A stretch of 64,000 nt of DNA, taken from the IMG/VR virus record IMGVR_UViG_3300042326_002445, positions 1-64,000 of that record. The stretch is one strand, 5' to 3'. Within the stretch, counting starts at the first letter, position 1. Each line of letters opens with the position of its first letter. Below the pieces are notes generated by a model. That model did no database searches. It was not told the origin of the DNA and saw only the letters and a list, made by a program, of their open reading frames with translations. The position numbers and the translations under genes were made by a program. Positions 10,232 to 63,670 of this stretch are shown here, one piece after another.

Positions 10232-11736
10232 TGGCACTTCCTGGCATACCGGTTATAGAATATCCGCTTGGTGCTGAAAAAATTTCTACAAAAATAATAG
10301 AAATTAAATGGAAATCTCCAAATGTTACATTTGGTCAGTTTGATCCAGTTTATTTTTATGAAATTTATTATAGGATAGGAAATGTTATTTCTTATTCTTC
10401 ACAAGAATGGAAAAGAATATCTAGAGTGCCATCTTCTGTTAATAAATACAATTGGGTAATACCAGAGTATTTATTTGGTTCAGATATATTTATTGGGGTA
10501 AGAAGTATTAATCAAAGTGGTCAGTTTTCTGATTATTCATCAAGCGGAATATTGTCAATATTGTCAAAACCATTGCCTAAGATATCAATATCTAACCCTA
10601 TTTCTGGTAAAACATATGGTTCTCAAATAAATATACAGTTGCAAAATTCTATCATATCTGAAGATACTTACAAGCTGAATAGGTACAGAATAAATCTATA
10701 TTATTCTAGCCAGTCAAATGATATATCTTATGCTCCAATAGTGGAAAGGGTTTCTGGCTCTACCTCTCAAATTATATGGAATACTTCTCAGTTGAATCCT
10801 GGTCAAGACTATTTTATATACGGTTTTTATAGCGATGATTTTGGTAGAAAGGGCCCTCAGTCTTCAATAGGACCTTTCACAGTAGAGAATCAAGGATACG
10901 TAATTATTGACACTGACGGCCCAGATGTAGCTTTAAAAATAAGTTCTAACAATGGATATATAAGAGATAGAACTGTCGGCATTGAACTATTCGCTTATGA
11001 CGACATGTCTGGCATACATGGCTTTAAGCTCATAGAAAATGAAAGAAATGCTGATGGTTCTACTACGGAAAATTCTCAAAGTGAACCTCGTTTTTATCAA
11101 AAAAATAATTTCTTACAACTTTCTGATAAAGATGCCAGATTTGTAATCACAGGTCTTGTTCAAGACATTGCCGGAAATAGAGCTAATCAAGAAGATGCAA
11201 GTTTAATTAAGATCGGAAATAAATTTAGAAAATTTTATAACAGAAATGGATTTAAGATCACTTCTTGGTCTAAAACGGAAGATTCACTATATATATGTAT
11301 ATATGATGGTAATTTTACTCAAGTTTTAAAAATATCTGACGGGCTTATTACGCCCATAAGTTCGTTTAGTGGTCTTATATCATCTCTAGCTTATATTGGC
11401 GGAAAATTGTACGGAAGTAGATTTAATGGAAATAGACTATTAGATCTTGTTTCTATAGAGGCAAATGGCATAGTGCCTGTTGCTTCTCTTTTAACACCAG
11501 ATACTGAAATAGTGGCAATTGCAGATTCGGGAGATGGAGGTGTACTGGTAGGTTGTATAAATGGTGAAATATATAGGCTATTTAATGATTCACTGCAATT
11601 TATATTCGATGTTCAAATTGGAATTTTAGGTTTTTCAAAAGGTCAATTTAATTCTGTTTTTATATTAACAAATAGTTCCGAAAAAGTATTTATATACAAA
11701 GATCAAAATGTCAATTTGGTAGAAATAACGATTTAA
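10231..11736 (+). CDS. FN3/Ig-like domain protein with a C-terminal beta-propeller-like region (501 aa), putative structural protein
   Basis: FN3-like pattern IEIKWKSP...YEIYYR...WKRI...YNWVIP...IGVRSIN. Ig-like IIDTDGP...AYDDMSGI...VQDIAGN. Coupled to the upstream gene by TAATG. Confidence 0.65.
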   Translation: MALPGIPVIEYPLGAEKISTKIIEIKWKSPNVTFGQFDPVYFYEIYYRIGNVISYSSQEWKRISRVPSSVNKYNWVIPEYLFGSDIFIGVRSINQSGQFSDYSSSGILSILSKPLPKISISNPISGKTYGSQINIQLQNSIISEDTYKLNRYRINLYYSSQSNDISYAPIVERVSGSTSQIIWNTSQLNPGQDYFIYGFYSDDFGRKGPQSSIGPFTVENQGYVIIDTDGPDVALKISSNNGYIRDRTVGIELFAYDDMSGIHGFKLIENERNADGSTTENSQSEPRFYQKNNFLQLSDKDARFVITGLVQDIAGNRANQEDASLIKIGNKFRKFYNRNGFKITSWSKTEDSLYICIYDGNFTQVLKISDGLITPISSFSGLISSLAYIGGKLYGSRFNGNRLLDLVSIEANGIVPVASLLTPDTEIVAIADSGDGGVLVGCINGEIYRLFNDSLQFIFDVQIGILGFSKGQFNSVFILTNSSEKVFIYKDQNVNLVEITI

Positions 11737-49800: not shown

Positions 49801-52800
49801 TCATAAAATTGTAAAAAACTATAGTGAGGGTAATCTTTCGCTTTTATGTGTTAGTTTAAATGGAGTGTCTAATCCAGCTAAAGGAATAGAAACAGCTACA
49901 TTGTTAAATACTGATATTTTAGGAAACTCTTATGAAGGTTCAAAGTCCGACTGTGGCGCAAGACAGGATTGCACAGAAGAAGTTTCGCCAGATATTATAG
50001 AAGTTGCAGATTTTCAGACAGTTCCTATTTCTGGTTTTCCAGTTCTTGGATCTAATCAAGTAGAATTTTTTCAGTCTTCCACATTTGCTTTACAATATCA
50101 GTTTAGTGCGTTTGATATGGTTTTGTGGTATGATCAAAACGTAAGAAATTTTCCAGTATCTGCCTCAGAAGTCGGGTCTGAATATTATCCGGGCGGCTCA
50201 TATGAAACTTGCCAGATTTGCACGTTAGGTTCTGGACTTTGCACCAGCACTGTTGACGGTGGCATAAATTGGTTTAAGCGATGGAGCTTACCATCAAGTT
50301 TGACTTACGAACTTTCAACTTTGCCTGCATGTGGTAGCGGAAATACTTCAAAAATAGCTGGCACAAGAGCAGCATTTAAAGAATATTTTGATGTTGATGG
50401 AATGATCAGGGGAATGTCAAGATACAGTCCAGATTGGGCTTTAGTATTTTTACATGGCGGCTCTGAGCCTTTATGGTGGGACACTCAAATCCCAGGGATG
50501 CAGCAGTGGGCCTTGTTAGCAGATGATGGGGAAGAATCTACTTCCATGGGATTGGGATTAGACGTTGTTCAGGCATATAAGGACGCATCTAATAAGTATA
50601 AACAAAAATTAATGGCTTATTTTTTCCCATTTGCTTGGATTGAGCTTGATTCTTCTGTTTATCCATATGCTTTAGACATTTTTGGAAATCATGTTATTGA
50701 AGGTCGTCACGGACCTAATATTAGTTATAGATCTTGTTTCAATAGTGCATTTGTTGAATTACTTGCTAAAATACACGTTGAGATGGCTCAAAAATGCTAT
50801 GATCTAGAAACTGGATATGGGTTTAATGGTTGCATGTGGGATGCAGCTCCATTGTTTTATACACTAGATTTTAGTCCAGATGCAATATCCGCATCTGGTA
50901 TCGATTCAACTACAAACTTTCCATGGCCATTGAATAATCCAGCAGACGGCTCTGACACCACTGCTTTGACTGACTTTGTTAGTAGTGTAACTGCCAATGC
51001 CAACCCTGGAACTTTGCTACTAAGAGATCCCAATCCTTCTTTTGGATGGACTCAGGCAGTAAAAGATAAGCTTCAAGCTTATGTATATGCTTTAAATAAT
51101 AAACAGCCAGATATAGTCAGAACTATAAGAGAGGCAGTTGATCAGGCTGGCTACTCGGAATTTGCTATACTGCATGCAGTAGGAAACTCTCAGCCTTCTT
51201 TTGAATGGCCTGGGAATTCTGAAGACGTTGTTTTGTATGCGTCTGGAGTAAAAACTGAAATCGGTGCAGAAGGGTATGTTCGCAGAAGACAAGCACCTGG
51301 AGTTACGAATAAAACTGGCGCTAAATCAGTGCCAGATCTTTGGCTTGCGATGCATACCGACTTGCTCCTTTCTCAAGCTCGCACAGGCAAGAGGGCTTAT
51401 GGATGGCAGATTGGCCAGTGGTTTATACCAAACTGGATATCTGGGGGTACTTGCGATGATACCTTCAAGTCTTGTTTGACATCTTTTGATAGTGGGTATT
51501 CTGGTAAGGTAGAGTTTAAAAATAATGTTCTTCCAAGAGACATAGCTGTTCGTGGTTGGCTGGAAAATCAATCTCTTCTTGCTCTAGTTTCACATACAAC
51601 TCCAGAATTTATGTATGCGTTTTATGATTGGTACAAATATGACCAAATAGAAGATCTTTCTGGTTTTGAAAATAGTGCTGACGCATTTGCTATTCAACAC
51701 TTACCCTTCATGAGAAGAATCTCGTCCATATTAGGTTCAATAGGTGACGCAAATGTTAGGTTGTTTAATAGAACTAATGTTGCATGGTGCGTAATATTGC
51801 ACAGGCCAGAAGTAGGATGGGGAAGTTATGCTTTTATAAACACTGGGATAAATGAGTCTTATGCTAATTTCTCATATTATTGGCCTATTTTTGGCGCAGT
51901 ACAAACGTGTGTCGAGCACGGCATCCCATATGTAATCGCGCAAGATGATGCATTTACGGTTAATAATTTTACTAATTCTGGCGTTGTTATAGTACCATTT
52001 GATAAAAATTTATTACCCATTTCTGCAAGACAAGAATTAGACAGTTTTAATGGACATGTAATATACTTGCAAGATGAAATTGCAAATGGTCAAGTTGATG
52101 ACAATTTCCATAATACGGAATTAGTTGGGAATAAGACTAGAGGGCAAGTTGCAAGAGACCAGCTATGGACGTTAATTCAGCAAGGTTCAAGAAATATCGT
52201 ATTACAGACAGAATTTTCTTATCCAGATAGTTTGCCTGAAAAACCAGTTCCTATAGCAGGATATGAAATAGGATTAGACTCATATGGGAATGAATCATTG
52301 CTTGTTACGCTTATTGCAGATGCTGCATGGCATGATGCAAGAAAGTTTGGCTTCTTTGGGCTTACGACAAATAATTATCCTATTAATGGAACATGTGGTA
52401 GGCAAAATCTGCTACTAGCTTCTCCAAATGATCCAGAGAATGATCTGGTAAGTTCGTTGGGTTTAAGGAAGATTTTAGATGTTTGCAGTTGCACTTATTC
52501 TGATACTTTTACGACTATCAACACCCTTGCTGGAAGAGATTGTTATTATGTTGAGCACGCTGCTGCAGGAGCTATTCCAGTAGATGTATTACCAGCAAGA
52601 GGAAAGTTAAACTACTATGCAGGATATCCTCCAGTTTGGAACAGCAATAGAGGTGCTAGAATAACTTTCAATGCATCTCAGTCTCCTTATAGATTACGTC
52701 AATTACTACTTGATAAAGAAAGTGGAATATTTGGACCAGTTGATATGTTTGTTAATGGGGATATGATAGATGTTGTACCTTTTGAAATAGGTTCAGTTGT

Positions 52801-55800
52801 TCAGGTTCAAATGAAAAACGAACAGATTATCCCACATGTTGGAATTTGCGTTAATCAAGATTCTCTTAAAATTTCTAACAATAATGAATTTGCTAATTTA
52901 CTTAATGATTTACAATCTCAGCCGACTTCATTTAACGTGATTAAGATTAGATTGGTGTGCGGCAATTCCTTAGTGGAAAGCGAAGTAGTTGCAAATACAA
53001 TATTTTCAGAGCTAGAGAGTCATGCTCGATCTAATCCTGACGCATATGACTGGTTGCGAAACTGTATTGGAGAAATTGGATATCCGACTTCTCACACTTT
53101 GTTGGGATTTTTAGAGTCTACTGAAGTTAACCCTTGTGGTAATGGCGATTTTTCTATAGGTGGAATTGTCATTCAAAATGAGGGGATTTGTACTATAGCT
53201 TCTAACCTGCCATCGCTATCTTCTCTTTATCAGGAAGTTAATGCTAATAGCGCATGCGAGTGCGAAAGCTCTTCAACTTACAAGATTTATGCTTCAAAAG
53301 CAAAAATAGACAGATCTTTAAATCCTGATGATGGCTCTTCTTGGGCAAGTTTTGTAGAAAATGAAATATCTTCTGTCTCAGACATATCAAATGGTTTGAT
53401 GCTTTTTATTAAACCGGTAAGTGATAATTCAAGTATTTACTACAATATTGACTCTAATGGCATGCCAATCATAGATGGTGTAGTAAAATATATTTCTGAT
53501 ATAAATGACGCAATATTTAATTACACTTTAGGCGAGAAAGACATCACAGATTACTATGCGGGTGTTGTAATAGATTTTAATCACTTATTTAACATAAACG
53601 ATAATCAGAGCTCCCTACACGCCTACGCTTGCTCGTACCCATTTACAATAAATTCGCAGGGTTCAGATTCTTATGATAATGTTAGAAGAGCAATAGCTTA
53701 TGTGAATGGTAATTTGATAGCACTGATTAATGCAATTAAATTTATTAATCAAAACATTTCTGTATCTATTAGAGGTCTTGGAAGAATTAATGACAGTGAT
53801 TTTGAAGAAAGCATGACATCTAAAACTCCTTATTCTGCCATTAATTGCACCCCTAATGCTAGAAAAGAATTGAGTAAAAGAGTATCTGAATTTTATGGAC
53901 CTTTGTTGGAAGCATGTGACTTTATTTACTTGTGGAACGGGAATGAAAGTGCAGAGCCTGATCTTTCTTCAGCTCTTGATTCGGTCTCTGCATCAAAGCT
54001 AAGACTTTCATGTTTGGTTAAACATTTTGAATATAGACAAGCAGATTGTCCATCTATATTTGTTGAAATTAATGGAGTTCATTTATCTTCTGACGGTTTA
54101 GGTCAGAATGATTATTGTAAAGTTTCTAATGCAGAAATTATTAAAGAATCTATTGATCCTTTTACCAACAAAAACATAGATGGGTTTGTATATTATTCAG
54201 AGCAAGAAAACATAGAAAAATTAATTTTTGAAAATTGTCCCATTTCTATTTCTAATCCTGAAGTATATGGTGCAGTAAATAGCTGTTGGGACTTGTCTAT
54301 AGATGGCTGCTCAGATCAGTCCACATTGATTGATGTTTTTGAGACTTCAATATATAATAATATATCATTTATTAATTCTTATATTAATAATACTAGCAGT
54401 AATCTTTATGTTCCATTAATTATCATGATTGGAGAATCTAATTCTGGTGGTTTGGCTAGAAATTCTCAAGCATTGCCTGAAGAACTTGGTATTAGACCAG
54501 AAGTAAAGATACTAAATAATTATACTTTAAATTTTGAAAATCTTAATATTTCGTCAAGTGGAAACAATATATTAGATCATCGTGGTCCGAATGGCATACC
54601 AGATGTAACAGATTCTGTATGGAATAGCAATGGAGGTTCTCCTCATGGCTGGGAGCTGGGTCTTGCCAATGCAGTTAGAGATAAAATGTTCTCTAGGGAT
54701 GTTGCATATCTCATCAAGGCTGGTCACGGTGGGTCTAAAATAGGAGATGACAGTATACCTGGAGATTGGGACACTTCAGGAATTTACTGGAACTTGTTCT
54801 TGCAAAGATACTCTGCAGCAATTTCGGAACTCAATGTTGACGGGTATTCTCCTCAGACATATATATGGTACGAAATAGGAATTAATGATTGCATATCAAA
54901 TGTTAACGTTGATCAGTGGAAAAATAAATTAGTACAAAAAATTAATAATATTAGATCAGTGACGGGAGTAAATTCTCCAGTATTTATTACTTTGCTGCCC
55001 GATGTAGCAAAAACTGGAGATTTAACTGATAGCATATCTGATTTTAATAATGCTATATTAGAAATATGTGTTGATCAACAGCTAGTATATTGGGTTAAGT
55101 CAGATGACGCTCATTTAAGATTCAACGACATATATCACTGGGATTACTATGGAATGAAGCTTATCTCCAGCAGAATGTCTAAGCTCTCTGCAAATACGAT
55201 AGGAGAAGGCGGAAATTATGTCGTTAGTCTAGATAACCCGCCTTTGCAGCCAGATTATTCTGATTACAGACCAATTGTGGCTGCTGTCCCTTATAATGAA
55301 GAACCTGACCCAGTACTTGAGTTCGTATATCCAGTATTCACGGTGAGAGGAAGGCTTTCTGGAGGTCCTACTTTAGATGAGCCAGGTACAGGCCCTACTC
55401 CAAGCCATATTGGTAATCCATCTGATGCTATTGGCTTCTTTAATGCCAGAGGAATACCAGCAGTAAAAAGATTTGTATTTTATTTTAATATTGGATCATC
55501 TACTTTTGACGGCGTATTTGCCGATCCAATTTACAATCAAACTTATGATAAATTATACAATCCTGCAGATAGTTGCATAAATGTAAATGGGGAAATAGTA
55601 AAACAAGACACTTTAGATCCCAGAGAAGGATCAAATCCAACTTTTAGAGGAAATCTTCCTTTTATATCACCATGGACGCTTGGAGCTAACACAAGATTAG
55701 AGCAATTTACCAGACAGTGGGTTGCAGAATATAAAAACTTGAATGGAAAGATATACGGTTTTATATCAGATAATGAGTCTTTAAATCCAACTGGATTTTG

Positions 55801-58800
55801 GGCTGAAAGCTCTTTAAGATATGATAATAACAACACCTCTAGAATACCACACTTTACAAAAATAATAAATGATCCAAGAGCATCTTTAACTGATTCCAGT
55901 GCTGGATATGCCTCAGAAATAAATCAAACTTTAGTTCAACAGTTAAGGTTAAATGATTTCTACAATATTAATGATTTTGATGTGGTTGACACAAAGACTG
56001 TAGACGACCCTCAGTTTAGGGGCGGATATTTGCATTGGGATTACGTGATGTATAGGCATGCTATTTGGTATGCGCAAAAACATTGGTATGATGTTATTAG
56101 CGAATATTTCCCAGGCCATAATTCAACCCATGTATGGACTTTTTATGTGCCAAAAGAGGACCATTTTAATGATATGAATGGGCATATCACATATCGAGAC
56201 ATGCTTTGTGGAGATACTGCCAATCCTTTACTTTTTGCAGAAGCTGGTGGCATTAGCGTAAACAGTGAAATAGATCCAAATAATAAAACTCGCACAAGAT
56301 TTCTTTCTCAATACAATCCCGGAGGCACTCCTTTTGGCTCAAGAGCATGGAATGCTCTTTTGCTTCAACAGCAAGAAATTAAAGCTATTAGGAGGCATGG
56401 GGAGAACCAGAAGTTTATACCATGGATAGGTAGTAGAAACTTAACTCTTAATAATGCCTTTGGTGGTAAAAATGATGTTAACCATAATTCTCTATGGGCT
56501 GAAGGCGTGTATCATTTAGCTCTACATAATCCTAATGCTATATACATGTTCTATCCAAGAAATTCAGATGGAGCTGGAGATACTGCTTGGTATCCTGAAA
56601 ATGGTTTAGTCTCTTATCAGCTACTCAACTCAATACTTAAAGAAGTTAATCAGCGAACTGGAAACAAGATTATATCTCTTGTAGAAAGTTCTGTGCAAAG
56701 AATAGATCTAGATTCTAAAGTACTTATAACTGGATGCAAAACTATTAAGAATAAGCATTTGTGGAGAATAACAGCTGATGTTATTAATGTGAACGAAGTA
56801 ATTATTGATGGTAATGTTTTTGCGGTTGATTCTAACTCTCCTGCTATTTGGTATGAAACAGAAATTAATGTTGGTTCTATAGATATTTTATCATATAATG
56901 CGGCGACTAAGTCAATTATACTTATTTCTTCAGTTGCTGAGGGACCTTTGTGCAAGCAGTGCTTGACCTATAGGGTCGCTCCAGCATTTACTGCTGACGA
57001 GATTAGTGTAGACAGTAGTTCTCTTCCTCAAAATGTAAGTAAGATGATACAAATTAGTGATAAATATCTCACTAGGAATTCTTACGATGAGGCAGACTCG
57101 TGTGGCGCAGGTGTATTCAGAATAAATGCTTGCCAAAGATATGCATTTTATGAAAACGACAATTTACGTTATAATTACAATGGCGCGATTAACTATATTA
57201 ATGAAGTTGTGCTAAAAAATAGTGATGTTAATCTGATCGACTACACAGGTTATATTGGTGCAGAATTTTCAAAGATAAAGCAGTTGTTTGTTGAGTACCT
57301 TTCTAATGCTTCTGGGCTAGCAGTAATGGGAGATTCTCTGCAATCTGGCATATCTCAAATGTTTGAAAATATTCAGGCAATAAAGAATTCTTCTCCTAAA
57401 GCAAAAGTAGGCTTATTAAATTGTCCTGTTGTTCCTTTTATTGCACCTAATATAACTTGGTCTTCTGCTAGTGATTCTGTAAAGTTCAACTATATAGATA
57501 AATGTGCTTCAATTATAGAAGACGTAATTTCAGAATCTGATTTTATATGCTTAGATCTTCGTCAGGAAATTTCAGTAAAAAATACTGAAGAATACGCTGA
57601 ATACCTGGCCTACATTAGATCTGTTAGTAAGGGCTTTAATGATTGGTTGGCATCCAAAAATCTAGTTAAAACAATTTTTGGTATTGTTTCAAAAGAAAGT
57701 TATGTAGACTTTAATGCCTTACCTGGTTATCAGTATAGACAGTCAGTAGCGATTACAGCAGATTATGTTCATGGTTTTATAGATAGTTCAGACGTTATTC
57801 TTAGATGGCTGGAATTGTTTGACTCAGATTCTTCTAATGATAATGGGGCTTTGTCTGCAATTTCAAATGTCATTGGTTTTGAAATAAGCGGTGCAGACAG
57901 TACTAGTTATAACGCAATTGCTGCTTATGGATTAAATAATCTTGCTGAGTTAAAATCTGAAATTTCTAGAAATTGCAGATCATATAACTCTACTAATGAC
58001 AACGTTAACACTATAGGTTTTAGACCTTCAAGAGGTCCTGATTATCCTGAATGGTTATCCAATTCTAGTCTGGCTATGAAATTTAATTTAACTGCAGAGG
58101 ATATAAAATCTTGTGCAGCTTTAGCGGTTCCGCATATGCCAGCATCTTCTTCAGTTCCAGTAGATGATGTCATTGTATGTTCTTTTATAAATACACAGTA
58201 TATTTCTACAAGTAGTCTATATGATATTCAAACTTCTTTGCCTTGCAGTACTACAAGAAATATAAATACTGCAAGATCTTCTTTCTTAAATGGATTAAAA
58301 ATTCAAGATTTCGTAGATTATGCGCAAAGTTATTCCCCAGATATACTTGTATTTAATGCTCATCAATATGATGAGCCATTGTGGTATGCAACTGATACAG
58401 CAATTGGACAATGGAATATTTTGACAAATGATCCACGGTATGGTCTAGGATTTGGTGTTGATATTCTGCTTTCTTACTCTGTAGCTGCAAATTTTATAAA
58501 TGCTAGGTGTATCGTGGAAATAAATCCATGTTCATTTGTTACCTTGCCTGCCGCCAAGTATCCATATAGTCTTAATTGTTTTGGCGGGATTATAAAAGAA
58601 AACTTTGATGGCGGAATCAATATATCTATAAGAAGTTTTTTGAACCAAGATTATGTAGATTTAACTTTTGATTATCATAATGAAATATTTGATAAAGGTA
58701 TAGACGGGATAATGTGGAGTAGAGAAGTAGTTTCAAAATTTGGAGATTTTTCTACAAATGTAATTGAAAAGTTTGCTAGATATTTAGGTTATGAAAATAT

Positions 58801-61800
58801 TGATGACTCAGAATTTAAAGAAAAGTTTCCATTCCCAGTTGCTTGTGGATCTATTTTAGGAAATTACTTATATAATGCTGCTGGCTTTACTGGAAGTTGC
58901 GATTCTTCTGCAAATATAAGTGTTGAAGACATTGCATTTAAAATCCCAACATTTGGCACCATATTCACTCAAGACATAAAAAATACCGTTATAGAATATC
59001 ATGCTTTTTGTCACAATTTAGCTAATACAAATATACTGTATTTGCAAAGTAAAATTAACGAATACTATGGATCTAGAGTAAAGGCCATAATTCCTCACGT
59101 TGAAAATGATATATTTTATAATTGGAAGTCTTGTTTAAGCGCTGAGATTTCAAATTACTCTAGTATTGTTAGTACAAATTCAGGAATTGAAAAACAAGCT
59201 CGTTCAAGGAGAATCCAAAATCCCAGCGCAGCTAGTAATACAGTAGATATACAAAGACCTGGCGCTGCGACCGTAGAAAATTTTGGACTTGACTTACTTT
59301 CATCTGCAGATGGTAAGAAAATTATTGTCAAGAAAATTCCAAATATACTTAGATACAGAGACACTGATTTTAGTAGCTTGTGGAATGAATTTGACAATGT
59401 TAATTCTACTAATATAGTAGAAGATGGCATCGTGAGAGAGGATGGCATTAAGGGCCATTTGGCTTCCTGTGTATTTGACTACATGCGCGCCGGTCATATT
59501 GTTATGTTAGATATGCCAAGCTGGAGTACATATAAGGATGATGGAGATACTTTATCAAATTCTTATATAAATAGCGACCCTCCCAGAAATGATATGCCAT
59601 TTATATTAAATGTCATAGATCTCAATAATCAGTTGAAGCAAAACGTATCTAGTTTATATAGACAAAACAAGCATGCTTGGATTGGTATACATTATGCAAA
59701 CAGAGCAAGAAAGTATATTCATGTATCAGATGCAGTCTCTTCAAATGGTCAAGAGTTTTACAGTGACATTAATCTTGACCTTTCTCGCTATGGCTATTCT
59801 GGAAATATGACAATAGGAGAATTTGCGTGGCCAATAATAGGAGCATACGAAACTTGCATATACAGTGGAATTTCTTCTGCAGTTATTAATGATTCTAGTT
59901 TAGAAAATGGTGATTTTTCTAGTCTAAAATTAATAATTATTCCGCATAGAAAACTTCTTAATAGTTTGCAAAAAGATAAGCTCAATCAATTTGAGGGTTC
60001 TGTAATTTATTTAGAAGATTTGTTGAGTCAAACAGGAAATCGCTGGTATAGTACGGCAAGCGATTTATCTGAATCCACGCCCGATTACGTTACTTTATAT
60101 AATTTGCTTTCTTTGCGGATCAAGAACTTAGTTGGCAGTTCTCCAATAAAAGTAAAATTAAATGTTGACAATTCTATAGTGACTGATTCTGGTAAGTACT
60201 TTTTGAAACCATCAAGTGTTTTTGACGCAGGCTTAAATAGCGATGTGCATAGAATCGTCGTGTGTGTTTCTAATGATAGAAATTGGGCTGATGTTAGAAA
60301 TAATACAAATGAAAATGGCATTTTTGGATTGACATCAAGAAACAATGATTTGTTAAATACTCAATCTGCTAATCAAATTTTCTCTAGTATTTATAGTAAT
60401 GACTCATTCTATGCAGATGGCTCTTATCCAGTTTTGGGTCAGTTTGCATATTATGCAGGAGATCCTCCAGCTGGATTTGGCAAAAGTTTCTCTGTATTTA
60501 TAACTTTCAACAATTATATATCTTTGGTGTCTGCTAAACAGATATCTTTAAATTTTGCTGATAATACTGTAGATAGTAAAGTTGTTTCTTGGTCTAACGG
60601 CTCAAGCGGTCAGTCAATATCTTCTAATTTTATATCTGATTTTTCTTGGTTTGAAATAGAATTTAAGTACGAAACGCCGCCTTCTAGTTCAAGCAGCAGT
60701 AGTTCAAGCAGTAGCAGTAGTTCAAGCAGCAGTAGTTCAAGCAGCAGTAGTTCAAGCAGCAGTAGTTCTAGCAGCAGTAGTTCAAGTTCTGGGTGTGTTG
60801 TTTGGACTGGTCCTGGCTGCCCGGACATGGATGGTGACGGGTTTGTTGGTGGTGCAGACCTTGGAGTATATTTCAGTGCTTTTACAGATTATAACCCGAT
60901 TGCTGACTTAAATGGAGATGGCGTTGTTAACGGAGCGGATCTTGGTATTCTTCAATCATATTGGGGTTCGTGCGTCGAATGTCCTAATTGGAACGGTAGC
61001 AGTAGTTCAAGCAGTAGTTCAAGCAGTAGTTCAAGCAGTAGTTCAAGCAGCAGTAGTTCAAGCAGCAGTAGTTCAAGCAGTAGTAGTTCAAGCAGTAGTT
61101 CAAGCAGTAGTTCAAGTTCTGGGTGCATTGTGTGGAATGGTCCTGGCTGCCCGGATGCAAATCAGGATGGAGTAGTAAATCAGTTTGATTTCGACATATT
61201 CTTGGCTTCTCAAGAAGAGTATAATCCTATTGCAGATCTTAACGGTGATGGTTTCGTAAATGGTAATGACATAGGTGTTTTACTTTCTTTTTGGGATAAT
61301 TGTGTTATATGCCCTAATTGGCCTCCTAGTTCTTCTAGTTCTTCTTCTAGTTCTTCTTCTAGTTCTTCTAGTTCTTCTTCTAGTTCTTCTTCTAGTTCTT
61401 CTTCTAGTTCTTCTTCTAGTTCTTCTTCTAGTTCTTCTTCTAGTTCTATTAATTTGTTTGGGGTTTTAAATACAAGGTCTGCTGTTGGGCCAAATCAGCC
61501 TTCATGGTGGTCTACTGCAAATGTGCATTTTCAATCCTTTAATCCATATGCAACGATCAAGCAGATTTATGAAGGCAATATGGAGGAATCTGCTTCGGCT
61601 TTAATTGAGCCATCATTATTGCTAGCATACGACAATCCATCTTCTGGTTGTTCCGTAAGGCCATATTATAGTTCAAGTCCAAACGGATATCCGCCTGGTT
61701 ATGAATTTGTTTATAGGTCAGAATATAATTGGATTCGAGTTGAAGGAAGTAATTTTAAGGAAAGATTTAATAATGGGCTTAATCGATGGTTTAATCCTGA

Positions 61801-63670
61801 GCAACGAGCGATAGTAGCTCACAGATATAGGCCAGATATTGTTATGATAGATTTGCATAATGGAGATGAGCCATTTATATATAAGTCTGCGGTTCCTCAA
61901 GCTCAGAGTTCTTTAATGATATCTGAAGAATATGGCTTGCCCGAGTATGACATGGTAAGGCCTTTTATAAGAAAGTCTCATGAGTTAGGAATGAAATGTA
62001 CAGCTTATTTTAAACCTCATTTTGCTTTCTTGAAAGAAGATATATTCCCGCCAGCATTAACTGCTAATGGCCAAAAAATTAGAGTAGAAATCAATCTCAC
62101 TCAATCGTGTAGCGTGCAAAGAAGTATATTCAATACTAACTTTAAGAATTTTTTGAAGAATTGCATGATAGAAATAGTAACTCCAGAATCTGGTGGTGGA
62201 TTAAATTGCGATGGCATTTATTGGGATTCAAGTTTACTTGAGGAGTTTTTAGATTTTAGTAATGACGCAATAGATGTTTTTGCCAAATATTTAGGATACG
62301 AAGGTTTTGATGATCCTGATTATATTTCTTGGGCTAGTGTTAATTTTCCATTCCCAAAAACTTCAGGCTGGGAAGTTTCAACAGAAAATGGATATGTTGG
62401 AGGTGGCGATAGACCATCCTACAGGGATGCATATCCAGACAATACATTTGAAGGTCTTGGTTATTGGAATCTTGTGAACAATATCAATGATTTAGATGCA
62501 AATGAAATTGCAAATTTAAAATCATATGTTAGTATAATTAAAAATAAGTACCACGAAATACTTAGAGAGATATCTGACGCTGTTTCTGTCGCCAGTAATG
62601 GGAATGCAGTATTTTTCCCAGGCGAGCTTCCATCTTGGCCAGACCAGCCACATGGTGCTGTTTCCGTAGAAATAGCCAGACATACTCATGCTGTAAAAAC
62701 TGAATTTGCAGTAGAGCCAAGAGGCTATAGTGGACTTAGAAAGAAATCAGAGCTCACTGATTCTGTTCTTAATAATGAAAGATTGTATTGCGACATACAA
62801 AGGCCGTCAATGTATCTCTCTATGACTTTGAACCAGAAACTTGATTTTGCCTCTGGAAATAAAACTGCTATTCAGTGGAATCCTCAAAGGGTTTGGATAT
62901 CTGATTTGCCTTTAGGCACATCTGGAGCAGCAAATACTTTGACAACTTTTAATAGTGATAGATTTTATCTATATCCAACTGGCTATCCGCTATTTTTTGA
63001 AAGAGGATTGGGAAGAGAAGATAGCATTCATGGATATTTAAGAGCAGTATATCAAATTATGATTAAAAATGGTAATATCTTTGATTTTAATACATGGTAC
63101 GGGACTGGATGGACTGGAGATCAAGATGAATTTATACAAGACGCAACTTTGATTAATAATGACGGTTATTATAATAATCCTAATAAGGGAGTATCTCCTG
63201 GAAATACTTATTCATTTTGGCGTAAAGCACTTTATCATGCAAGAAAAATGAAAGAAGAAATTATTAAAGAAGGACTAATATTAAGCATAAGGGAAGCTTA
63301 TTCTTGGGCTGCAATACATGTTTCAACCGCTGGCAGAATAGGGATCAACGCTCCAGTTGCTTGGGGCTCAGGCTATGTGACTGGATCTAATAAGCTTATA
63401 AACTTAACAAATAACACAAATTCTTTAGGACAAAATTGGGGAGAATTCTGGTGGCCCATACTCGGCGCGATGCAATCTTTTGAAAATAAGATGATTCCTT
63501 ACAGCTTAGTTCTTGACGATCAGCTTAAAAATGGGGAATTAAATGGGATTAAGGTAATAGTAGTACCTCATCGTGAATGGCTTTCTCTTGCTCAAGAATT
63601 GCGTCTTGTAGAATTTGTAAGCAGAGGTGGAAAAGTGGTTTATATGGATGAAATATTTAATGTAACTTGA
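46880..63670 (+). CDS. Giant (5596 aa) multi-enzyme protein: trypsin-like protease, beta-helix, three GHL6/GH42-like modules, SGNH esterase, GH56-like barrels, two dockerin-like domains
   Basis: 16.8 kb uninterrupted ORF with TAHY/FDY/GDSG, VYVDAVNGDDSNNGS...PFK, GESNS...HWD, three copies of WPI.GA, DLNGDGVVNGADLG and poly-Ser spacers. No signal peptide. Confidence 0.8.
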   Translation: MAYIINYKPNLHDLYTYGSQPIIDPSNWQNNRRVYPTGYNQNLFIKDPFYNLNFNVDFSGMDREGRGAPGYGFNQYEGQSGYLPSGVLVNSGSGSVTLPSIAGQFRSFGNNADCYHLGCPVGNFEIASNYNHWNNGAWAKVLISPKHFLATAHYVGSGNNNTSIRLLGKNNQVVTRNATKLIDFSNSSNFPPGYNWPNSSFDYTLFELDTALTEQEMQQIKVYKFLNAFNLPTSVPLFYVSPQSVVSVLNSLGNDYFNINLYPDAAYRGSLVSGVPTQSTFSVWVGDSGTPVFAYVPGIDETCFLYSAWGGMTISDNGNTANPTATKKWFDALKQYIFDRIGYNIGLVNYSTTGGGNSSSSSSIGSSSSSSSSSSSNVDSGLWMPISSDNPFARNIDMTSDTDSPPIARWSSVPLQWIHDGESVKASVVAYHSTGIKRVDFICDGGEYESGAHIIGVINPVADSSSKQDEYACSIDINDSWSEGIHTIRAIVYANNGTKRVLQGSWLPKYSSISDPYNYFNNGEVDFTFIVNRGSYDGNTVYVDAVNGDDSNNGSFNSPFKNLWNAIPAAHAFHLENSIKEDVIICKAGEYRLSPLLNGDYSSGTPSALALGAGRIGWLKIKALDGLSKKDVVITNRSTNFGSVANPTSYAVKSNTLVSRFTVFENITLENFYDSSTNVSGEKDYIISTDGSYGFDSRGVWLNNCSIRGRSGVSVDTLVSTLNNQVNIFFKAYPGIAQNVVGFATNCNVNSLYRGFDGFVMLKQCGIGNTVEFAIKNCASIFSCNISNVGNVGAVADSAVINFSHTSLAKSNIIVAKNQINKSAISHFRINPHRNVFDSEIYFEGFAIVSNYFSRATGGPGKSYIYNGIKQIFMSHNSMLDYLSIHDASGGVWGGDVLVSDVYCKSNLLNGIIVDSTSGSSASLGAGSVALNQGFLNSNSEISSNIFLLPTQSNNPLFLSLIVNDKNKQVNQSVHKIVKNYSEGNLSLLCVSLNGVSNPAKGIETATLLNTDILGNSYEGSKSDCGARQDCTEEVSPDIIEVADFQTVPISGFPVLGSNQVEFFQSSTFALQYQFSAFDMVLWYDQNVRNFPVSASEVGSEYYPGGSYETCQICTLGSGLCTSTVDGGINWFKRWSLPSSLTYELSTLPACGSGNTSKIAGTRAAFKEYFDVDGMIRGMSRYSPDWALVFLHGGSEPLWWDTQIPGMQQWALLADDGEESTSMGLGLDVVQAYKDASNKYKQKLMAYFFPFAWIELDSSVYPYALDIFGNHVIEGRHGPNISYRSCFNSAFVELLAKIHVEMAQKCYDLETGYGFNGCMWDAAPLFYTLDFSPDAISASGIDSTTNFPWPLNNPADGSDTTALTDFVSSVTANANPGTLLLRDPNPSFGWTQAVKDKLQAYVYALNNKQPDIVRTIREAVDQAGYSEFAILHAVGNSQPSFEWPGNSEDVVLYASGVKTEIGAEGYVRRRQAPGVTNKTGAKSVPDLWLAMHTDLLLSQARTGKRAYGWQIGQWFIPNWISGGTCDDTFKSCLTSFDSGYSGKVEFKNNVLPRDIAVRGWLENQSLLALVSHTTPEFMYAFYDWYKYDQIEDLSGFENSADAFAIQHLPFMRRISSILGSIGDANVRLFNRTNVAWCVILHRPEVGWGSYAFINTGINESYANFSYYWPIFGAVQTCVEHGIPYVIAQDDAFTVNNFTNSGVVIVPFDKNLLPISARQELDSFNGHVIYLQDEIANGQVDDNFHNTELVGNKTRGQVARDQLWTLIQQGSRNIVLQTEFSYPDSLPEKPVPIAGYEIGLDSYGNESLLVTLIADAAWHDARKFGFFGLTTNNYPINGTCGRQNLLLASPNDPENDLVSSLGLRKILDVCSCTYSDTFTTINTLAGRDCYYVEHAAAGAIPVDVLPARGKLNYYAGYPPVWNSNRGARITFNASQSPYRLRQLLLDKESGIFGPVDMFVNGDMIDVVPFEIGSVVQVQMKNEQIIPHVGICVNQDSLKISNNNEFANLLNDLQSQPTSFNVIKIRLVCGNSLVESEVVANTIFSELESHARSNPDAYDWLRNCIGEIGYPTSHTLLGFLESTEVNPCGNGDFSIGGIVIQNEGICTIASNLPSLSSLYQEVNANSACECESSSTYKIYASKAKIDRSLNPDDGSSWASFVENEISSVSDISNGLMLFIKPVSDNSSIYYNIDSNGMPIIDGVVKYISDINDAIFNYTLGEKDITDYYAGVVIDFNHLFNINDNQSSLHAYACSYPFTINSQGSDSYDNVRRAIAYVNGNLIALINAIKFINQNISVSIRGLGRINDSDFEESMTSKTPYSAINCTPNARKELSKRVSEFYGPLLEACDFIYLWNGNESAEPDLSSALDSVSASKLRLSCLVKHFEYRQADCPSIFVEINGVHLSSDGLGQNDYCKVSNAEIIKESIDPFTNKNIDGFVYYSEQENIEKLIFENCPISISNPEVYGAVNSCWDLSIDGCSDQSTLIDVFETSIYNNISFINSYINNTSSNLYVPLIIMIGESNSGGLARNSQALPEELGIRPEVKILNNYTLNFENLNISSSGNNILDHRGPNGIPDVTDSVWNSNGGSPHGWELGLANAVRDKMFSRDVAYLIKAGHGGSKIGDDSIPGDWDTSGIYWNLFLQRYSAAISELNVDGYSPQTYIWYEIGINDCISNVNVDQWKNKLVQKINNIRSVTGVNSPVFITLLPDVAKTGDLTDSISDFNNAILEICVDQQLVYWVKSDDAHLRFNDIYHWDYYGMKLISSRMSKLSANTIGEGGNYVVSLDNPPLQPDYSDYRPIVAAVPYNEEPDPVLEFVYPVFTVRGRLSGGPTLDEPGTGPTPSHIGNPSDAIGFFNARGIPAVKRFVFYFNIGSSTFDGVFADPIYNQTYDKLYNPADSCINVNGEIVKQDTLDPREGSNPTFRGNLPFISPWTLGANTRLEQFTRQWVAEYKNLNGKIYGFISDNESLNPTGFWAESSLRYDNNNTSRIPHFTKIINDPRASLTDSSAGYASEINQTLVQQLRLNDFYNINDFDVVDTKTVDDPQFRGGYLHWDYVMYRHAIWYAQKHWYDVISEYFPGHNSTHVWTFYVPKEDHFNDMNGHITYRDMLCGDTANPLLFAEAGGISVNSEIDPNNKTRTRFLSQYNPGGTPFGSRAWNALLLQQQEIKAIRRHGENQKFIPWIGSRNLTLNNAFGGKNDVNHNSLWAEGVYHLALHNPNAIYMFYPRNSDGAGDTAWYPENGLVSYQLLNSILKEVNQRTGNKIISLVESSVQRIDLDSKVLITGCKTIKNKHLWRITADVINVNEVIIDGNVFAVDSNSPAIWYETEINVGSIDILSYNAATKSIILISSVAEGPLCKQCLTYRVAPAFTADEISVDSSSLPQNVSKMIQISDKYLTRNSYDEADSCGAGVFRINACQRYAFYENDNLRYNYNGAINYINEVVLKNSDVNLIDYTGYIGAEFSKIKQLFVEYLSNASGLAVMGDSLQSGISQMFENIQAIKNSSPKAKVGLLNCPVVPFIAPNITWSSASDSVKFNYIDKCASIIEDVISESDFICLDLRQEISVKNTEEYAEYLAYIRSVSKGFNDWLASKNLVKTIFGIVSKESYVDFNALPGYQYRQSVAITADYVHGFIDSSDVILRWLELFDSDSSNDNGALSAISNVIGFEISGADSTSYNAIAAYGLNNLAELKSEISRNCRSYNSTNDNVNTIGFRPSRGPDYPEWLSNSSLAMKFNLTAEDIKSCAALAVPHMPASSSVPVDDVIVCSFINTQYISTSSLYDIQTSLPCSTTRNINTARSSFLNGLKIQDFVDYAQSYSPDILVFNAHQYDEPLWYATDTAIGQWNILTNDPRYGLGFGVDILLSYSVAANFINARCIVEINPCSFVTLPAAKYPYSLNCFGGIIKENFDGGINISIRSFLNQDYVDLTFDYHNEIFDKGIDGIMWSREVVSKFGDFSTNVIEKFARYLGYENIDDSEFKEKFPFPVACGSILGNYLYNAAGFTGSCDSSANISVEDIAFKIPTFGTIFTQDIKNTVIEYHAFCHNLANTNILYLQSKINEYYGSRVKAIIPHVENDIFYNWKSCLSAEISNYSSIVSTNSGIEKQARSRRIQNPSAASNTVDIQRPGAATVENFGLDLLSSADGKKIIVKKIPNILRYRDTDFSSLWNEFDNVNSTNIVEDGIVREDGIKGHLASCVFDYMRAGHIVMLDMPSWSTYKDDGDTLSNSYINSDPPRNDMPFILNVIDLNNQLKQNVSSLYRQNKHAWIGIHYANRARKYIHVSDAVSSNGQEFYSDINLDLSRYGYSGNMTIGEFAWPIIGAYETCIYSGISSAVINDSSLENGDFSSLKLIIIPHRKLLNSLQKDKLNQFEGSVIYLEDLLSQTGNRWYSTASDLSESTPDYVTLYNLLSLRIKNLVGSSPIKVKLNVDNSIVTDSGKYFLKPSSVFDAGLNSDVHRIVVCVSNDRNWADVRNNTNENGIFGLTSRNNDLLNTQSANQIFSSIYSNDSFYADGSYPVLGQFAYYAGDPPAGFGKSFSVFITFNNYISLVSAKQISLNFADNTVDSKVVSWSNGSSGQSISSNFISDFSWFEIEFKYETPPSSSSSSSSSSSSSSSSSSSSSSSSSSSSSSSSSSSSGCVVWTGPGCPDMDGDGFVGGADLGVYFSAFTDYNPIADLNGDGVVNGADLGILQSYWGSCVECPNWNGSSSSSSSSSSSSSSSSSSSSSSSSSSSSSSSSSSSSSSSSSGCIVWNGPGCPDANQDGVVNQFDFDIFLASQEEYNPIADLNGDGFVNGNDIGVLLSFWDNCVICPNWPPSSSSSSSSSSSSSSSSSSSSSSSSSSSSSSSSSSSSSSSSINLFGVLNTRSAVGPNQPSWWSTANVHFQSFNPYATIKQIYEGNMEESASALIEPSLLLAYDNPSSGCSVRPYYSSSPNGYPPGYEFVYRSEYNWIRVEGSNFKERFNNGLNRWFNPEQRAIVAHRYRPDIVMIDLHNGDEPFIYKSAVPQAQSSLMISEEYGLPEYDMVRPFIRKSHELGMKCTAYFKPHFAFLKEDIFPPALTANGQKIRVEINLTQSCSVQRSIFNTNFKNFLKNCMIEIVTPESGGGLNCDGIYWDSSLLEEFLDFSNDAIDVFAKYLGYEGFDDPDYISWASVNFPFPKTSGWEVSTENGYVGGGDRPSYRDAYPDNTFEGLGYWNLVNNINDLDANEIANLKSYVSIIKNKYHEILREISDAVSVASNGNAVFFPGELPSWPDQPHGAVSVEIARHTHAVKTEFAVEPRGYSGLRKKSELTDSVLNNERLYCDIQRPSMYLSMTLNQKLDFASGNKTAIQWNPQRVWISDLPLGTSGAANTLTTFNSDRFYLYPTGYPLFFERGLGREDSIHGYLRAVYQIMIKNGNIFDFNTWYGTGWTGDQDEFIQDATLINNDGYYNNPNKGVSPGNTYSFWRKALYHARKMKEEIIKEGLILSIREAYSWAAIHVSTAGRIGINAPVAWGSGYVTGSNKLINLTNNTNSLGQNWGEFWWPILGAMQSFENKMIPYSLVLDDQLKNGELNGIKVIVVPHREWLSLAQELRLVEFVSRGGKVVYMDEIFNVT
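47270..47930 (+). other. Trypsin-like (clan PA) serine protease domain
   Basis: VLISPKHFLATAHYV (His at 47336), FDYTLFELD (Asp at 47483) and VGDSGTP (Ser at 47741) give an intact triad in the canonical order. Confidence 0.8.
48497..49970 (+). other. DUF1565-like motif followed by a pectin-lyase-like right-handed beta-helix
   Basis: TVYVDAVNGDDSNNGSFNSPFKNLWNAI...IICKAGEY, Asn-ladder repeats, and a closing DILGN...DCGARQ. Confidence 0.7.
54410..55190 (+). other. SGNH hydrolase, sialate O-acetylesterase (SASA)/CE6-like domain
   Basis: Block I IIMIGESNSGG, block II YLIKAGHGGS, block III WYEIGIND, block V DIYHW. Confidence 0.8.
60683..61447 (+). repeat. Poly-Ser tracts (36, 41 and 40 residues) flanking two Cys-bracketed dockerin-like domains
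   Basis: Ser tracts at 60683-60790, 60998-61120 and 61328-61447. Dockerin-like units at 60794-60991 and 61124-61321 (C.VW.GPGCPD...YNPIADLNGDG.VNG.D.G.L.S.W..CV.CPNW). Confidence 0.95.

What the first reader, a model, noticed from the sequence alone, without database searches (positions are those of the whole stretch)
50380..63670. Triplicated GHL6/GH42-like module; the middle copy has lost both putative catalytic acids
Three copies share Y[SR]PD......H...EP, RS.[FL]N, DFS, W..[IL].H-type and WPI.GA...[VI]IVP/IIIP/IVVP motifs, the last resembling the GH42 trimerisation (class I GATase-like) domain. Copies 1 and 3 have NGCMWD/DGIYWD and VKTE/VKTE. Copy 2 has DGIMWS (58703-58720) and VSTN (about 59170). 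Inference: the Asp and Glu are the catalytic pair, and copy 2 is a pseudo-enzyme retained as a glycan-binding module.
Basis: partly seen in the sequence, partly recalled or inferred. Interest (0 to 1): 0.65.

Follow-up and report, generated by a model that had tools for sequence, protein, structure and literature searches.

The report
Dead glycosidase copy in phage giant
One 5,596-residue protein of a very large lake-water phage carries three old, diverged copies of a GHL6/GH151-type sugar-cutting module, and the middle copy keeps the fold but has lost five of the six conserved active-site residues, so it is almost certainly not an enzyme of that type.

Summary
All quoted motifs sit at the stated coordinates, inside one ORF (46880-63670, 5,596 aa) of a 224-kb phage record.

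- **Homology:** the three modules are homologous at about 24% identity (BLASTP E 1e-21 to 1e-34).
- **Pfam:** no Pfam model hits them.
- **Family:** a family profile matches GHL6 + GH42M proteins (hhalign 99.7%, E 2e-26). AlphaFold models match GH151 fucosidase 6TVK and GH42 enzymes (Z 15-17). The nearest ESM Atlas folds are almost all GHL6 + Glyco_hydro_42M.
- **Catalytic residues:** The Glu belongs to a K-x-E motif at the end of β6, where the GH151 acid/base lies.
- **Conservation:** both residues are invariant in 19-20 other relatives. Copy 2 alone lacks them.
- **Further losses in copy 2:** it has also lost the Lys (β6), a Tyr (β2) and a Trp (β7). That is five of six active-site columns against one of 14 other conserved columns (p = 0.002).

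So "pseudo-enzyme" is well supported. "Kept as a glycan binder" is untested and weakened, because likely sugar-contact residues are gone too.

The copies are three deep lineages, not a recent triplication. Copy 2 has no known orthologue and sits on a long branch.

This is a new phage-borne variant of a known kind, of moderate interest.

The parts
46880..63670 (+). Single giant ORF (5,596 aa, P0001) that holds all three modules.
   Evidence: ORF list and translation without a stop. Orthologous giant proteins with one module each occur in other metagenomic phage contigs.
50057..52714 (+). Copy 1 (aa ~1060-1945): leader, (β/α)8 barrel, Rossmann/GH42M-like domain and β-sandwich. It is predicted to be active.
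   Evidence: BLASTP self-matches. It matches 20 of 20 family-conserved columns. It falls in clade A with P0004, P0005, P0007 and P0035. Leader alignment.
50840..50842 (+). Copy 1 Asp1321, the predicted nucleophile at the end of β4 (motif NGCMWD).
   Evidence: The column aligns with D154 of GH151 6TVK.
51251..51259 (+). Copy 1 Lys1458-Thr-Glu1460. The Glu is the predicted acid/base at the end of β6.
58013..60559 (+). Copy 2 (aa ~3712-4560): same three-domain fold, with the active site dismantled. It is a pseudo-glycosidase.
   Evidence: AlphaFold model: pTM 0.75, barrel pLDDT 85-96. VIA-align: GH42 3TTS Z 16.7 over 487 aa and GH151 6TVK Z 15.5 over 477 aa. ESM Atlas neighbours are GHL6 + GH42M. 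It matches 14 of 20 conserved columns. It has a lone long branch of 1.45.
58517..58519 (+). Copy 2 Glu3880, replacing the family-invariant Tyr at the end of β2.
58718..58720 (+). Copy 2 Ser3947, replacing the invariant Asp nucleophile (motif DGIMWS).
   Evidence: In the model it follows strand 134-137 directly. Identical in four other runs.
59171..59179 (+). Copy 2 Ser4098-Thr-Asn4100, replacing the invariant Lys-x-Glu at the end of β6.
   Evidence: Model strand 288-291.
59330..59332 (+). Copy 2 Lys4151, replacing the conserved Trp of β7.
61451..63667 (+). Copy 3 (aa ~4858-5596): leader, barrel and Rossmann/GH42M-like domain. The protein ends before any β-sandwich. It is predicted to be active.
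   Evidence: AlphaFold model. VIA-align top hit is 6TVK, Z 15.9 over 391 aa. It falls in clade B with P0002, P0003 and P0006.
62225..62227 (+). Copy 3 Asp5116, the predicted nucleophile (motif DGIYWD).
   Evidence: It follows model strand 153-156.
62696..62704 (+). Copy 3 Lys5273-Thr-Glu5275. The Glu is the predicted acid/base.
   Evidence: It follows model strand 312-315, where pLDDT is low.
60791..61321 (+). Two dockerin-type-I-like calcium-loop modules (60791-60991 and 61121-61321), flanked by poly-Ser linkers (60683-60790, 60998-61120, 61328-61447). They separate copies 2 and 3.
   Evidence: Pfam Dockerin_1, E 1.4e-6. Coordinates.
54419..55177 (+). SGNH/SASA-type carbohydrate-esterase-like domain (aa ~2514-2766) between copies 1 and 2. 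It is not part of the repeat.
   Evidence: Pfam PF03629, E 2.6e-5, 24.4 bits, just under the 24.8-bit cut-off.

Best explanation
The region is part of one 5,596-aa protein of a very large lake-water phage, most likely a virion surface or fibre protein that degrades host glycans.

The protein carries three anciently diverged paralogous modules. Each has a leader, a (β/α)8 barrel and a Rossmann/GH42M-like domain. Copies 1 and 2 also have a β-sandwich. The modules belong to a rare phage-borne sister clade of the GHL6/GH151 glycosidases.

Copies 1 and 3 keep the full conserved pocket: Tyr (β2), Arg (β3), Asp (β4), Lys-x-Glu (β6) and Trp (β7). They are inferred to be retaining glycosidases with an Asp nucleophile and a Glu acid/base, as in GH151.

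Copy 2 keeps the fold but has replaced five of those six residues (Y>E, D>S, K>S, E>N, W>K). It is therefore a dead pseudo-glycosidase. Because the likely sugar-contact residues went with the catalytic ones, it probably does not bind the ancestral sugar in the old pocket. Its present role is more likely structural, as a spacer or oligomerisation unit, or binding through a new surface.

**Shown:** homology, fold, residue pattern.
**Inferred:** catalytic roles, inactivity, virion location, present role of copy 2.
For: - **Triplication:** BLASTP E 1e-21 to 1e-34.
- **Family link:** hhalign of the phage family against GHL6 proteins gives 99.7%, E 2e-26, over 430 columns, with the WD and K-x-E motifs in register.
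- **Link to solved structures:** profiles hit GH151 6TVK at E 2.9e-8 to 3.6e-14, with the Asp column on chain residue 183, which is D154. D154 is the nucleophile on β4 and E235 the acid/base on β6 (PMC10154630).
- **Models:** they place the Asp/Ser just after barrel strand 4 and the Glu/Asn at the end of strand 6.
- **Fold matches:** 6TVK Z 15.9, GH42 Z 16.7, and ESM Atlas neighbours that are GHL6 + GH42M at TM 0.59-0.65.
- **Conservation:** the Asp and the K-x-E are invariant in all other rows. Copy 2 loses five of six active-site-face columns against one of 14 others, Fisher p = 0.002.
- **Rate and composition:** copy 2 has a lone long branch, 1.45 against 0.33 and 0.56. Its first- and second-position codon GC has fallen to the genome background, while GC3 is the same in all three copies.
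- **Phage identity:** IMG/VR record, plus helicases, DNA polymerase, UvsX and a clamp.
Against: - No enzyme assay exists.
- The Glu could not be aligned residue by residue with E235 of 6TVK. HMM alignments stop before β6, and model confidence around β6 in copy 3 is low.
- The Pfam GHL6, GH42 and GH42M models do not hit any copy.
- The substrate is unknown.
- Virion location is an inference. No PHROG or structural hallmark was found nearby.
- A second Glu four residues downstream (E4104 in copy 2) is conserved in all phage-family modules including copy 2. Its role is unknown.
Confidence: 0.72

Rival explanations
1. One reading: copy 2 is a lectin-like pseudo-glycosidase that still binds the host glycan in the old active-site pocket and serves as the receptor-binding part of the protein.
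For: - The fold and the three-domain architecture are retained with confident barrel geometry.
- Arg3918 (β3) and the β7 Lys/Arg are kept.
- Natural pseudo-glycosidases that bind glycans are well known, for example chitinase-like proteins and Klotho (PMC7828330).
Against: - Copy 2 has lost not only the catalytic pair but also the conserved Tyr, Lys and Trp of the pocket. Known chi-lectins keep their aromatic binding residues (own knowledge).
- The long branch and the composition relaxed to background suggest weak constraint.
- No orthologue exists to show conservation of a new pocket.
Confidence: 0.2
2. Copy 2 is a decaying relic with no function of its own. It persists because any frameshift or stop in it would also remove the downstream dockerin modules and copy 3.
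For: - It has the longest terminal branch.
- Its amino-acid composition and GC1/GC2 equal the genome background.
- No orthologue was found in 1.84 billion representatives or in IMG/VR.
Against: - It keeps 13 of the 14 conserved columns outside the active-site face and 14 of 20 overall, which include the Gly, Pro and core Trp columns.
- It shows no truncation, and it aligns with the other two copies over about 570-800 aa at E 1e-32 to 1e-34.
- It models as a confident barrel.
- Its losses are concentrated on the active-site face rather than spread evenly (p = 0.002).
- In-frame deletion would be an easy way to lose 850 useless residues.
Confidence: 0.15
3. Copy 2 is still an enzyme, with a rebuilt active site and a different chemistry or substrate. 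One possibility is the new carboxylate Glu3880 (β2) working with the retained Glu4104 or with Glu3949.
For: - The Tyr>Glu change puts a new acid on the active-site face.
- Glu4104 is conserved in all phage-family modules.
Against: - There is no precedent in GHL6, GH151 or GH29 for such a pair.
- No orthologue shows conservation of the new residues.
- Loss of the Trp and Lys argues against a sugar subsite.
- This reading is pure inference.
Confidence: 0.08

Closest known systems
GH151 α-L-fucosidase ALfuk2 of Paenibacillus thiaminolyticus (PDB 6TVK), a GHL6-type protein
   Same: - It has the same three-domain order: (β/α)8 barrel, Rossmann/GH42M-like domain, β-sandwich.
- It is the top VIA-align hit for copy 3 (Z 15.9) and is tied at the top for copy 2 (Z 15.5).
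- Its DG(I/F)xxD motif, with the nucleophile Asp at the end of β4, aligns with the modules' Asp.
- Its acid/base Glu lies at the end of β6 (PMC10154630).
   Different: - Sequence identity is only about 11-12%.
- The phage-only profile finds no solved structure.
- The phage modules have insertions that add about 35-65 residues between β4 and β6, further ones later in the barrel, and a conserved ~100-aa leader.
- The substrate is unknown.
- The modules are embedded three times in a 5,596-aa phage protein instead of a ~660-aa free enzyme.
Pfam GHL6 (PF14871) + Glyco_hydro_42M (PF08532) bacterial and archaeal hypothetical glycosidases
   Same: - Profile-profile homology over both domains.
- The same conserved set: Tyr, Arg, Asp, K-x-E and Trp.
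- They are the nearest ESM Atlas folds.
   Different: - The Pfam models themselves do not score the modules.
- The phage family forms a separate clade with 100/100 support.
- Only about 10 representatives of the phage family exist among 1.84 billion proteins.
GH42 β-galactosidases (for example 3TTS, 1KWG)
   Same: - The same three-domain architecture, and the highest Z for the copy 2 model (16.7 over 487 aa).
   Different: GH42 uses two Glu residues, an acid/base on β4 in an N-E motif and a nucleophile on β7 (own knowledge of clan GH-A). The modules have W-D on β4 and a Trp on β7. There is no Pfam GH42 hit.
Natural pseudo-glycosidases (chitinase-like lectins YKL-39/40, the Klotho GH1-like tandem repeats)
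   Same: A glycosidase fold retained after loss of catalytic residues, in Klotho as tandem copies within one protein (PMC7828330).
   Different: Those proteins have shown ligand binding. Here binding is untested, and the likely sugar-contact residues are also lost. The context is a phage protein next to apparently intact paralogues.

Membership tests
Pfam GHL6 (PF14871) | A score above the Pfam gathering threshold of 35 bits. | tested here: not met
   No hit at E <= 0.1 on any copy. No hit at E <= 1 anywhere in the 224-kb record.
Pfam GHL6 (PF14871) | Homology to bona fide GHL6 proteins over the barrel. | tested here: met
   hhalign of A2 against A3 gives 99.7%, E 2e-26, over 430 columns. The A3 members carry PF14871.
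CAZy GH151 | Three-domain architecture: (β/α)8 barrel, Rossmann-like domain, β-sandwich. | tested here: met
   Models and VIA-align to 6TVK give Z 15.9 and 15.5. Copy 3 lacks the β-sandwich.
CAZy GH151 | Asp nucleophile at the end of β4 (D154 of ALfuk2). | tested here: met
   Met for copies 1 and 3 (D1321, D5116), whose column aligns with chain residue 183, which is D154. Not met for copy 2, which has S3947.
CAZy GH151 | Glu acid/base at the end of β6 (E235 of ALfuk2). | tested here: inconclusive
   The K-x-E Glu lies at the end of the sixth barrel strand in both models and is invariant in GHL6. No residue-level alignment to E235 could be obtained. Copy 2 has Asn.
CAZy GH151 | α-L-fucosidase activity. 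| not testable with these tools
   This needs an enzyme assay.
CAZy GH42 | Glu acid/base on β4 and Glu nucleophile on β7, with a Pfam PF02449 match. | tested here: not met
   β4 ends in W-D and β7 carries a conserved Trp. There is no PF02449 hit.
Glyco_hydro_42M (PF08532) trimerisation domain | A class-I-glutamine-amidotransferase-like Rossmann domain after the barrel. | tested here: met
   Met at fold and profile level. Weak library hits through this domain are GHL6/GH42M proteins. GH42 chains match profile positions 511-575 at E 0.12. Fold matches span it. The Pfam model itself does not score; there is only a faint GLMA_2nd hit at E 0.059.
Pseudo-glycosidase (glycan-binding pseudoenzyme) | Loss of catalytic residues with the fold retained. 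| tested here: met
Pseudo-glycosidase (glycan-binding pseudoenzyme) | Retained glycan binding. | not testable with these tools
   This needs binding assays. Loss of the Tyr, Lys and Trp lowers the prior.

The most novel reading that the evidence does not exclude
The phage-borne clade is a new glycoside hydrolase family with a substrate of its own on lake bacteria. In addition, copy 2 is not dead but rebuilt: the new Glu3880 on β2 together with the retained Glu4104 forms a different catalytic or binding site. One phage protein would then carry three functionally distinct descendants of a single fold.
Probability: 0.1. Interest if true: 0.7.

Novelty: new variant of a known kind. Interest (0 to 1): 0.45.

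Why it matters
- It adds a rare, phage-specific branch to the poorly characterised GHL6/GH151 glycosidases. Only about 10 representatives exist among 1.84 billion proteins, and most of those that could be placed lie in giant proteins or on phage-like contigs.
- It offers a natural experiment: two apparently intact modules and one dismantled module sit side by side in a single polypeptide.
- The conserved residue set (Tyr, Arg, Asp, K-x-E, Trp) gives testable active-site predictions for the whole GHL6 family, most of which is annotated only as hypothetical.
- For phage biology, it shows how huge phages build multi-enzyme surface proteins: a β-helix-like region, an esterase-like domain, several glycosidase-like barrels and dockerin-like modules in one chain.

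Tried and rejected
- **Family libraries:** Pfam and PHROGs on all parts of P0001 gave no GHL6, GH42 or PHROG hit.
- **Solved structures:** the phage-only profile A1 gave nothing meaningful against PDB sequences.
- **Mapping the Glu onto E235 of 6TVK by sequence:** profiles A3, A5 and A7 align only up to about chain residue 226. The β4-β6 sub-profile A6 finds nothing. The primary GH151 paper is not held.
- **Orthologues of copy 2:** none in IMG/VR. The alignment A2 was too diverse for the locus search. The exhaustive search found no copy-2-like lineage.
- **dN/dS from population data:** four lake-water runs are identical over copies 2 and 3, so there is nothing to count.
- **A fourth copy:** testing whether aa 2780-3340 is a fourth copy gave a non-significant hhalign result, probability 2%.
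- **Virion hallmarks:** Pfam families for two terminase large-subunit domains, tail sheath and baseplate J were not found, and there is no cohesin partner for the dockerins. The record is only about 55% complete, so absence means little.
- **Complex prediction:** no job was sent. A trimer of a whole module exceeds the size limit, and no binding claim is made.
Full report
**1. What is there**

The finding's span (50380-63670) lies inside one uninterrupted ORF, 46880-63670 on the + strand, of 5,596 aa (P0001). The window is the first 64 kb of a 223,646-bp IMG/VR virus record that CheckV rates 55% complete.

- All large ORFs of the window are on the + strand, and GC is about 33%.
- Further along, the record encodes phage-type helicases, a DnaB-like helicase, a DNA polymerase in two adjacent ORFs, a UvsX-like recombinase, an exonuclease and a clamp. 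It is therefore a large dsDNA phage.
- At least 20 lake-water metagenome runs hold the sequence.
- Neighbouring genes are giant ORFs with RCC1, dockerin/EF-hand, BNR-like and Laminin_G_3 matches and nothing else recognisable. This fits a surface or fibre gene cluster but does not prove one.

**2. The observation**

The three copies are homologous well beyond chance:

| Pair | E-value | Length aligned |
|---|---|---|
| Copy 1 vs copy 2 | 1e-34 | about 800 aa |
| Copy 2 vs copy 3 | 2e-32 | about 570-640 aa |
| Copy 1 vs copy 3 | 1e-21 | about 570-640 aa |

Identity is about 24% in each case.

A conserved leader of about 100 aa precedes each barrel. The modules therefore run about 50057-52714, 58013-60559 and 61451-63667.

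The copies are not tandem:
- Between copies 1 and 2 lie about 1,770 residues of other domains. These include a SASA/SGNH esterase-like stretch and a stretch at aa 2780-3340 whose language-model features resemble GH42 N-terminal barrels. That stretch is not detectably related to the modules.
- Between copies 2 and 3 lie two dockerin-like modules with poly-Ser linkers.

Contigs from four other runs cover copies 2 and 3 without a single difference. The odd codons of copy 2 are therefore real.

**3. What family**

Direct family scans fail. Pfam, PHROGs and a phage-only profile against PDB sequences give nothing for the barrel.

An exhaustive profile search of 1.84 billion representatives found only about 10 proteins with the whole module. 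Several of these are giant (2,456-4,412 aa) and lie on phage-like contigs. One more sits in a syntenic 4,092-aa gene of another IMG/VR contig. Each of these carries one copy.

The weaker hits match only the C-terminal domain. They are GHL6 (PF14871) proteins, one of them also carrying Glyco_hydro_42M.

Evidence that links the phage family to GHL6 and GH151:
- Profile-profile comparison of the phage family with these GHL6 proteins gives 99.7% probability, E 2e-26, over 430 columns and both domains.
- GHL6-containing profiles hit one solved structure, GH151 α-L-fucosidase ALfuk2 (6TVK), at E 1.5e-9 to 3.6e-14. Behind it come weak GH29 fucosidase hits.
- Mfuc3, a founding GH151 enzyme, was reported to hit GHL6 plus the A4 β-galactosidase middle domain (PMC4723247).

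**4. Fold**

| Model | Mean pLDDT | pTM | Note |
|---|---|---|---|
| Copy 3 | 62.5 | 0.64 | good for β1-β4, poor in family-specific insertions |
| Copy 2 | 67.2 | 0.75 | barrel pLDDT 85-96 |

Both models show an eight-stranded barrel followed by a Rossmann-like domain. Copy 2 also has a β-sandwich.

- **Foldseek, copy 3:** top matches are GH42, Cwp19, GH151 and GH164.
- **VIA-align, copy 3:** 6TVK ranks first, Z 15.9 over 391 aa.
- **VIA-align, copy 2:** GH42 enzymes and 6TVK are tied at Z 15.5-16.7 over about 480 aa across all three domains.
- **ESM Atlas:** the nearest clusters are almost all GHL6 + Glyco_hydro_42M, TM 0.59-0.65.
- **BFVD viral library:** nothing comparable, TM <= 0.26.

**5. 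The catalytic pair**

In ALfuk2 the nucleophile is D154 at the end of β4 and the acid/base is E235 at the end of β6 (review PMC10154630).

- **The Asp.** HMM alignments put the modules' Asp column on 6TVK chain residue 183, in the motif DGIFLD. With the chain's 29 extra N-terminal residues this is D154. In the models, the Asp of copy 3 and the Ser of copy 2 follow barrel strand 4 directly.
- **The Glu.** The Glu of copy 3 and the Asn of copy 2 end strand 6. I could not get a residue-level alignment of the Glu to E235. That assignment rests on strand topology and invariance.
- **Invariance.** In a merged alignment of 13 phage-family modules and 11 GHL6 proteins, the Asp and the K-x-E are identical in every row that covers them except copy 2. 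K-x-E is also invariant in a 30-member GHL6 alignment.
- **Not GH42-type.** A GH42-type pair (Glu on β4, Glu on β7) is excluded by the sequence, which has W-D on β4 and a Trp on β7.

**6.

Twenty columns are at least 85% conserved among the other 21 rows. Copy 1 matches 20. Copy 3 matches 16 of the 18 it covers. Copy 2 matches 14.

Copy 2's six losses are:

| Position | Change |
|---|---|
| β2 | Tyr > Glu3880 |
| β4 | Asp > Ser3947 |
| β6 | Lys > Ser4098 |
| β6 | Glu > Asn4100 |
| β7 | Trp > Lys4151 |
| Rossmann-like domain | Pro > Ser4332 |

That is five of the six columns on the active-site face against one of 14 elsewhere (Fisher p = 0.002). Only Arg3918 (β3) survives. Most of the conserved Gly, Pro and core Trp columns are kept, in agreement with the confident barrel model.

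**7. Evolution**

A maximum-likelihood tree rooted on GHL6 gives three deep lineages:
- copy 1 with P0004, P0005, P0007 and P0035 (100/100 support);
- copy 3 with P0002, P0003 and P0006 (100/100 support);
- copy 2 alone, on a terminal branch of 1.45 against 0.33 and 0.56.

So this is not a recent triplication. Relatives that could be inspected carry a single copy.

The first- and second-position codon GC of copy 2, and its amino-acid make-up, have fallen to the genome background. Copies 1 and 3 stay GC-richer at those positions, and GC3 is the same in all three. This fits relaxed constraint on copy 2. It is only suggestive, and no orthologue or polymorphism allows a dN/dS test.

**8. Mechanism proposed**

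Copies 1 and 3 are inferred to be retaining glycosidases of unknown specificity. The Asp attacks the anomeric carbon and the K-x-E Glu acts as acid/base. Tyr, Arg, Lys and Trp would hold the sugar.

The rest of the protein is consistent with a multi-enzyme host-glycan-degrading surface protein, but none of this is shown:
- an esterase-like domain;
- a further barrel-like region;
- an N-terminal region that I read as β-helix-like, from the sequence only and without a test;
- dockerin-like calcium modules.

Copy 2 cannot run this chemistry. Precedent exists for glycan-binding pseudo-glycosidases (PMC7828330). Here, however, the probable sugar contacts are gone too. I therefore rank a structural or oligomerisation role, or binding through a new surface, above binding in the old pocket. 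GH42 and GH151 enzymes are oligomers, and in GH151 the active site is completed by a neighbouring subunit.

| Reading | Confidence |
|---|---|
| Copy 2 is inactive as a GHL6-type glycosidase | about 0.85 |
| Functionless relic | about 0.15 |
| Rebuilt enzyme | about 0.08 |

**9. Verdict**

This is a new, divergent, phage-borne branch of a known superfamily, containing one natural pseudoenzyme copy. It is of moderate interest. It is useful mainly as a source of testable active-site predictions for GHL6 and as an example of the architecture of giant phage surface proteins.

Noticed in passing
window 55217-56899 (P0001 aa 2780-3340): A further glycosidase-like region. Its ESM features are nearest to GH42 N-terminal / GH_cat clusters (score 0.96), and it has a G-F-I-S-D-N-E stretch at aa 2960 that looks like a clan GH-A N-E motif. 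It is not detectably related to the three modules (hhalign probability 2%).
   Followed up: partly
window 54419-55177 (P0001 aa 2514-2766): A SASA/SGNH carbohydrate-esterase-like domain, Pfam E 2.6e-5, 0.4 bits under the gathering cut-off. It would fit de-O-acetylation of a host glycan before cleavage.
   Followed up: no
window 60683-61447: Two dockerin-type-I-like modules, each with Cys-rich ends, separated by 36-41-residue poly-Ser linkers. ORF 11740-17070 has four more dockerin stretches plus EF-hands. No cohesin was found in the 224-kb record.
   Followed up: partly
window 60854-60936 and 60905-61377: This is the only variable part among four lake-water runs. There are seven substitutions in dockerin module 1 in two runs. 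Two other runs show an alternative joint (61377 to 60905, with 40 other letters between). This may reflect repeat-driven rearrangement, length variation or mis-assembly in the poly-Ser/dockerin region.
   Followed up: no
window 47735-47752 (P0001 aa 286-291): A G-D-S-G-T-P motif in the N-terminal 360 residues recalls the serine-protease active-site motif. No Pfam, PHROG or PDB sequence match was found.
   Followed up: partly
window 10364-10447: ARAGORN calls a tRNA-Val (CAC) on the + strand inside the 501-aa ORF 10231-11736. Either the ORF start is wrong or the call is spurious.
   Followed up: no
L013:14192-15541 and L013:15639-17486 (genome 97192-100486, outside the window): The DNA polymerase (phrog_405) is split into two adjacent ORFs that cover profile positions 33-435 and 425-944.
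   Followed up: no
L006:4286-16564 (IMGVR_UViG_3300044451_000434): A second huge-phage contig (164 kb, 39% complete) has syntenic 776-aa, 571-aa and 4,092-aa genes. These match the window's 783-aa, 568-aa and 5,596-aa genes, but the 4,092-aa protein has a single module.
   Followed up: partly
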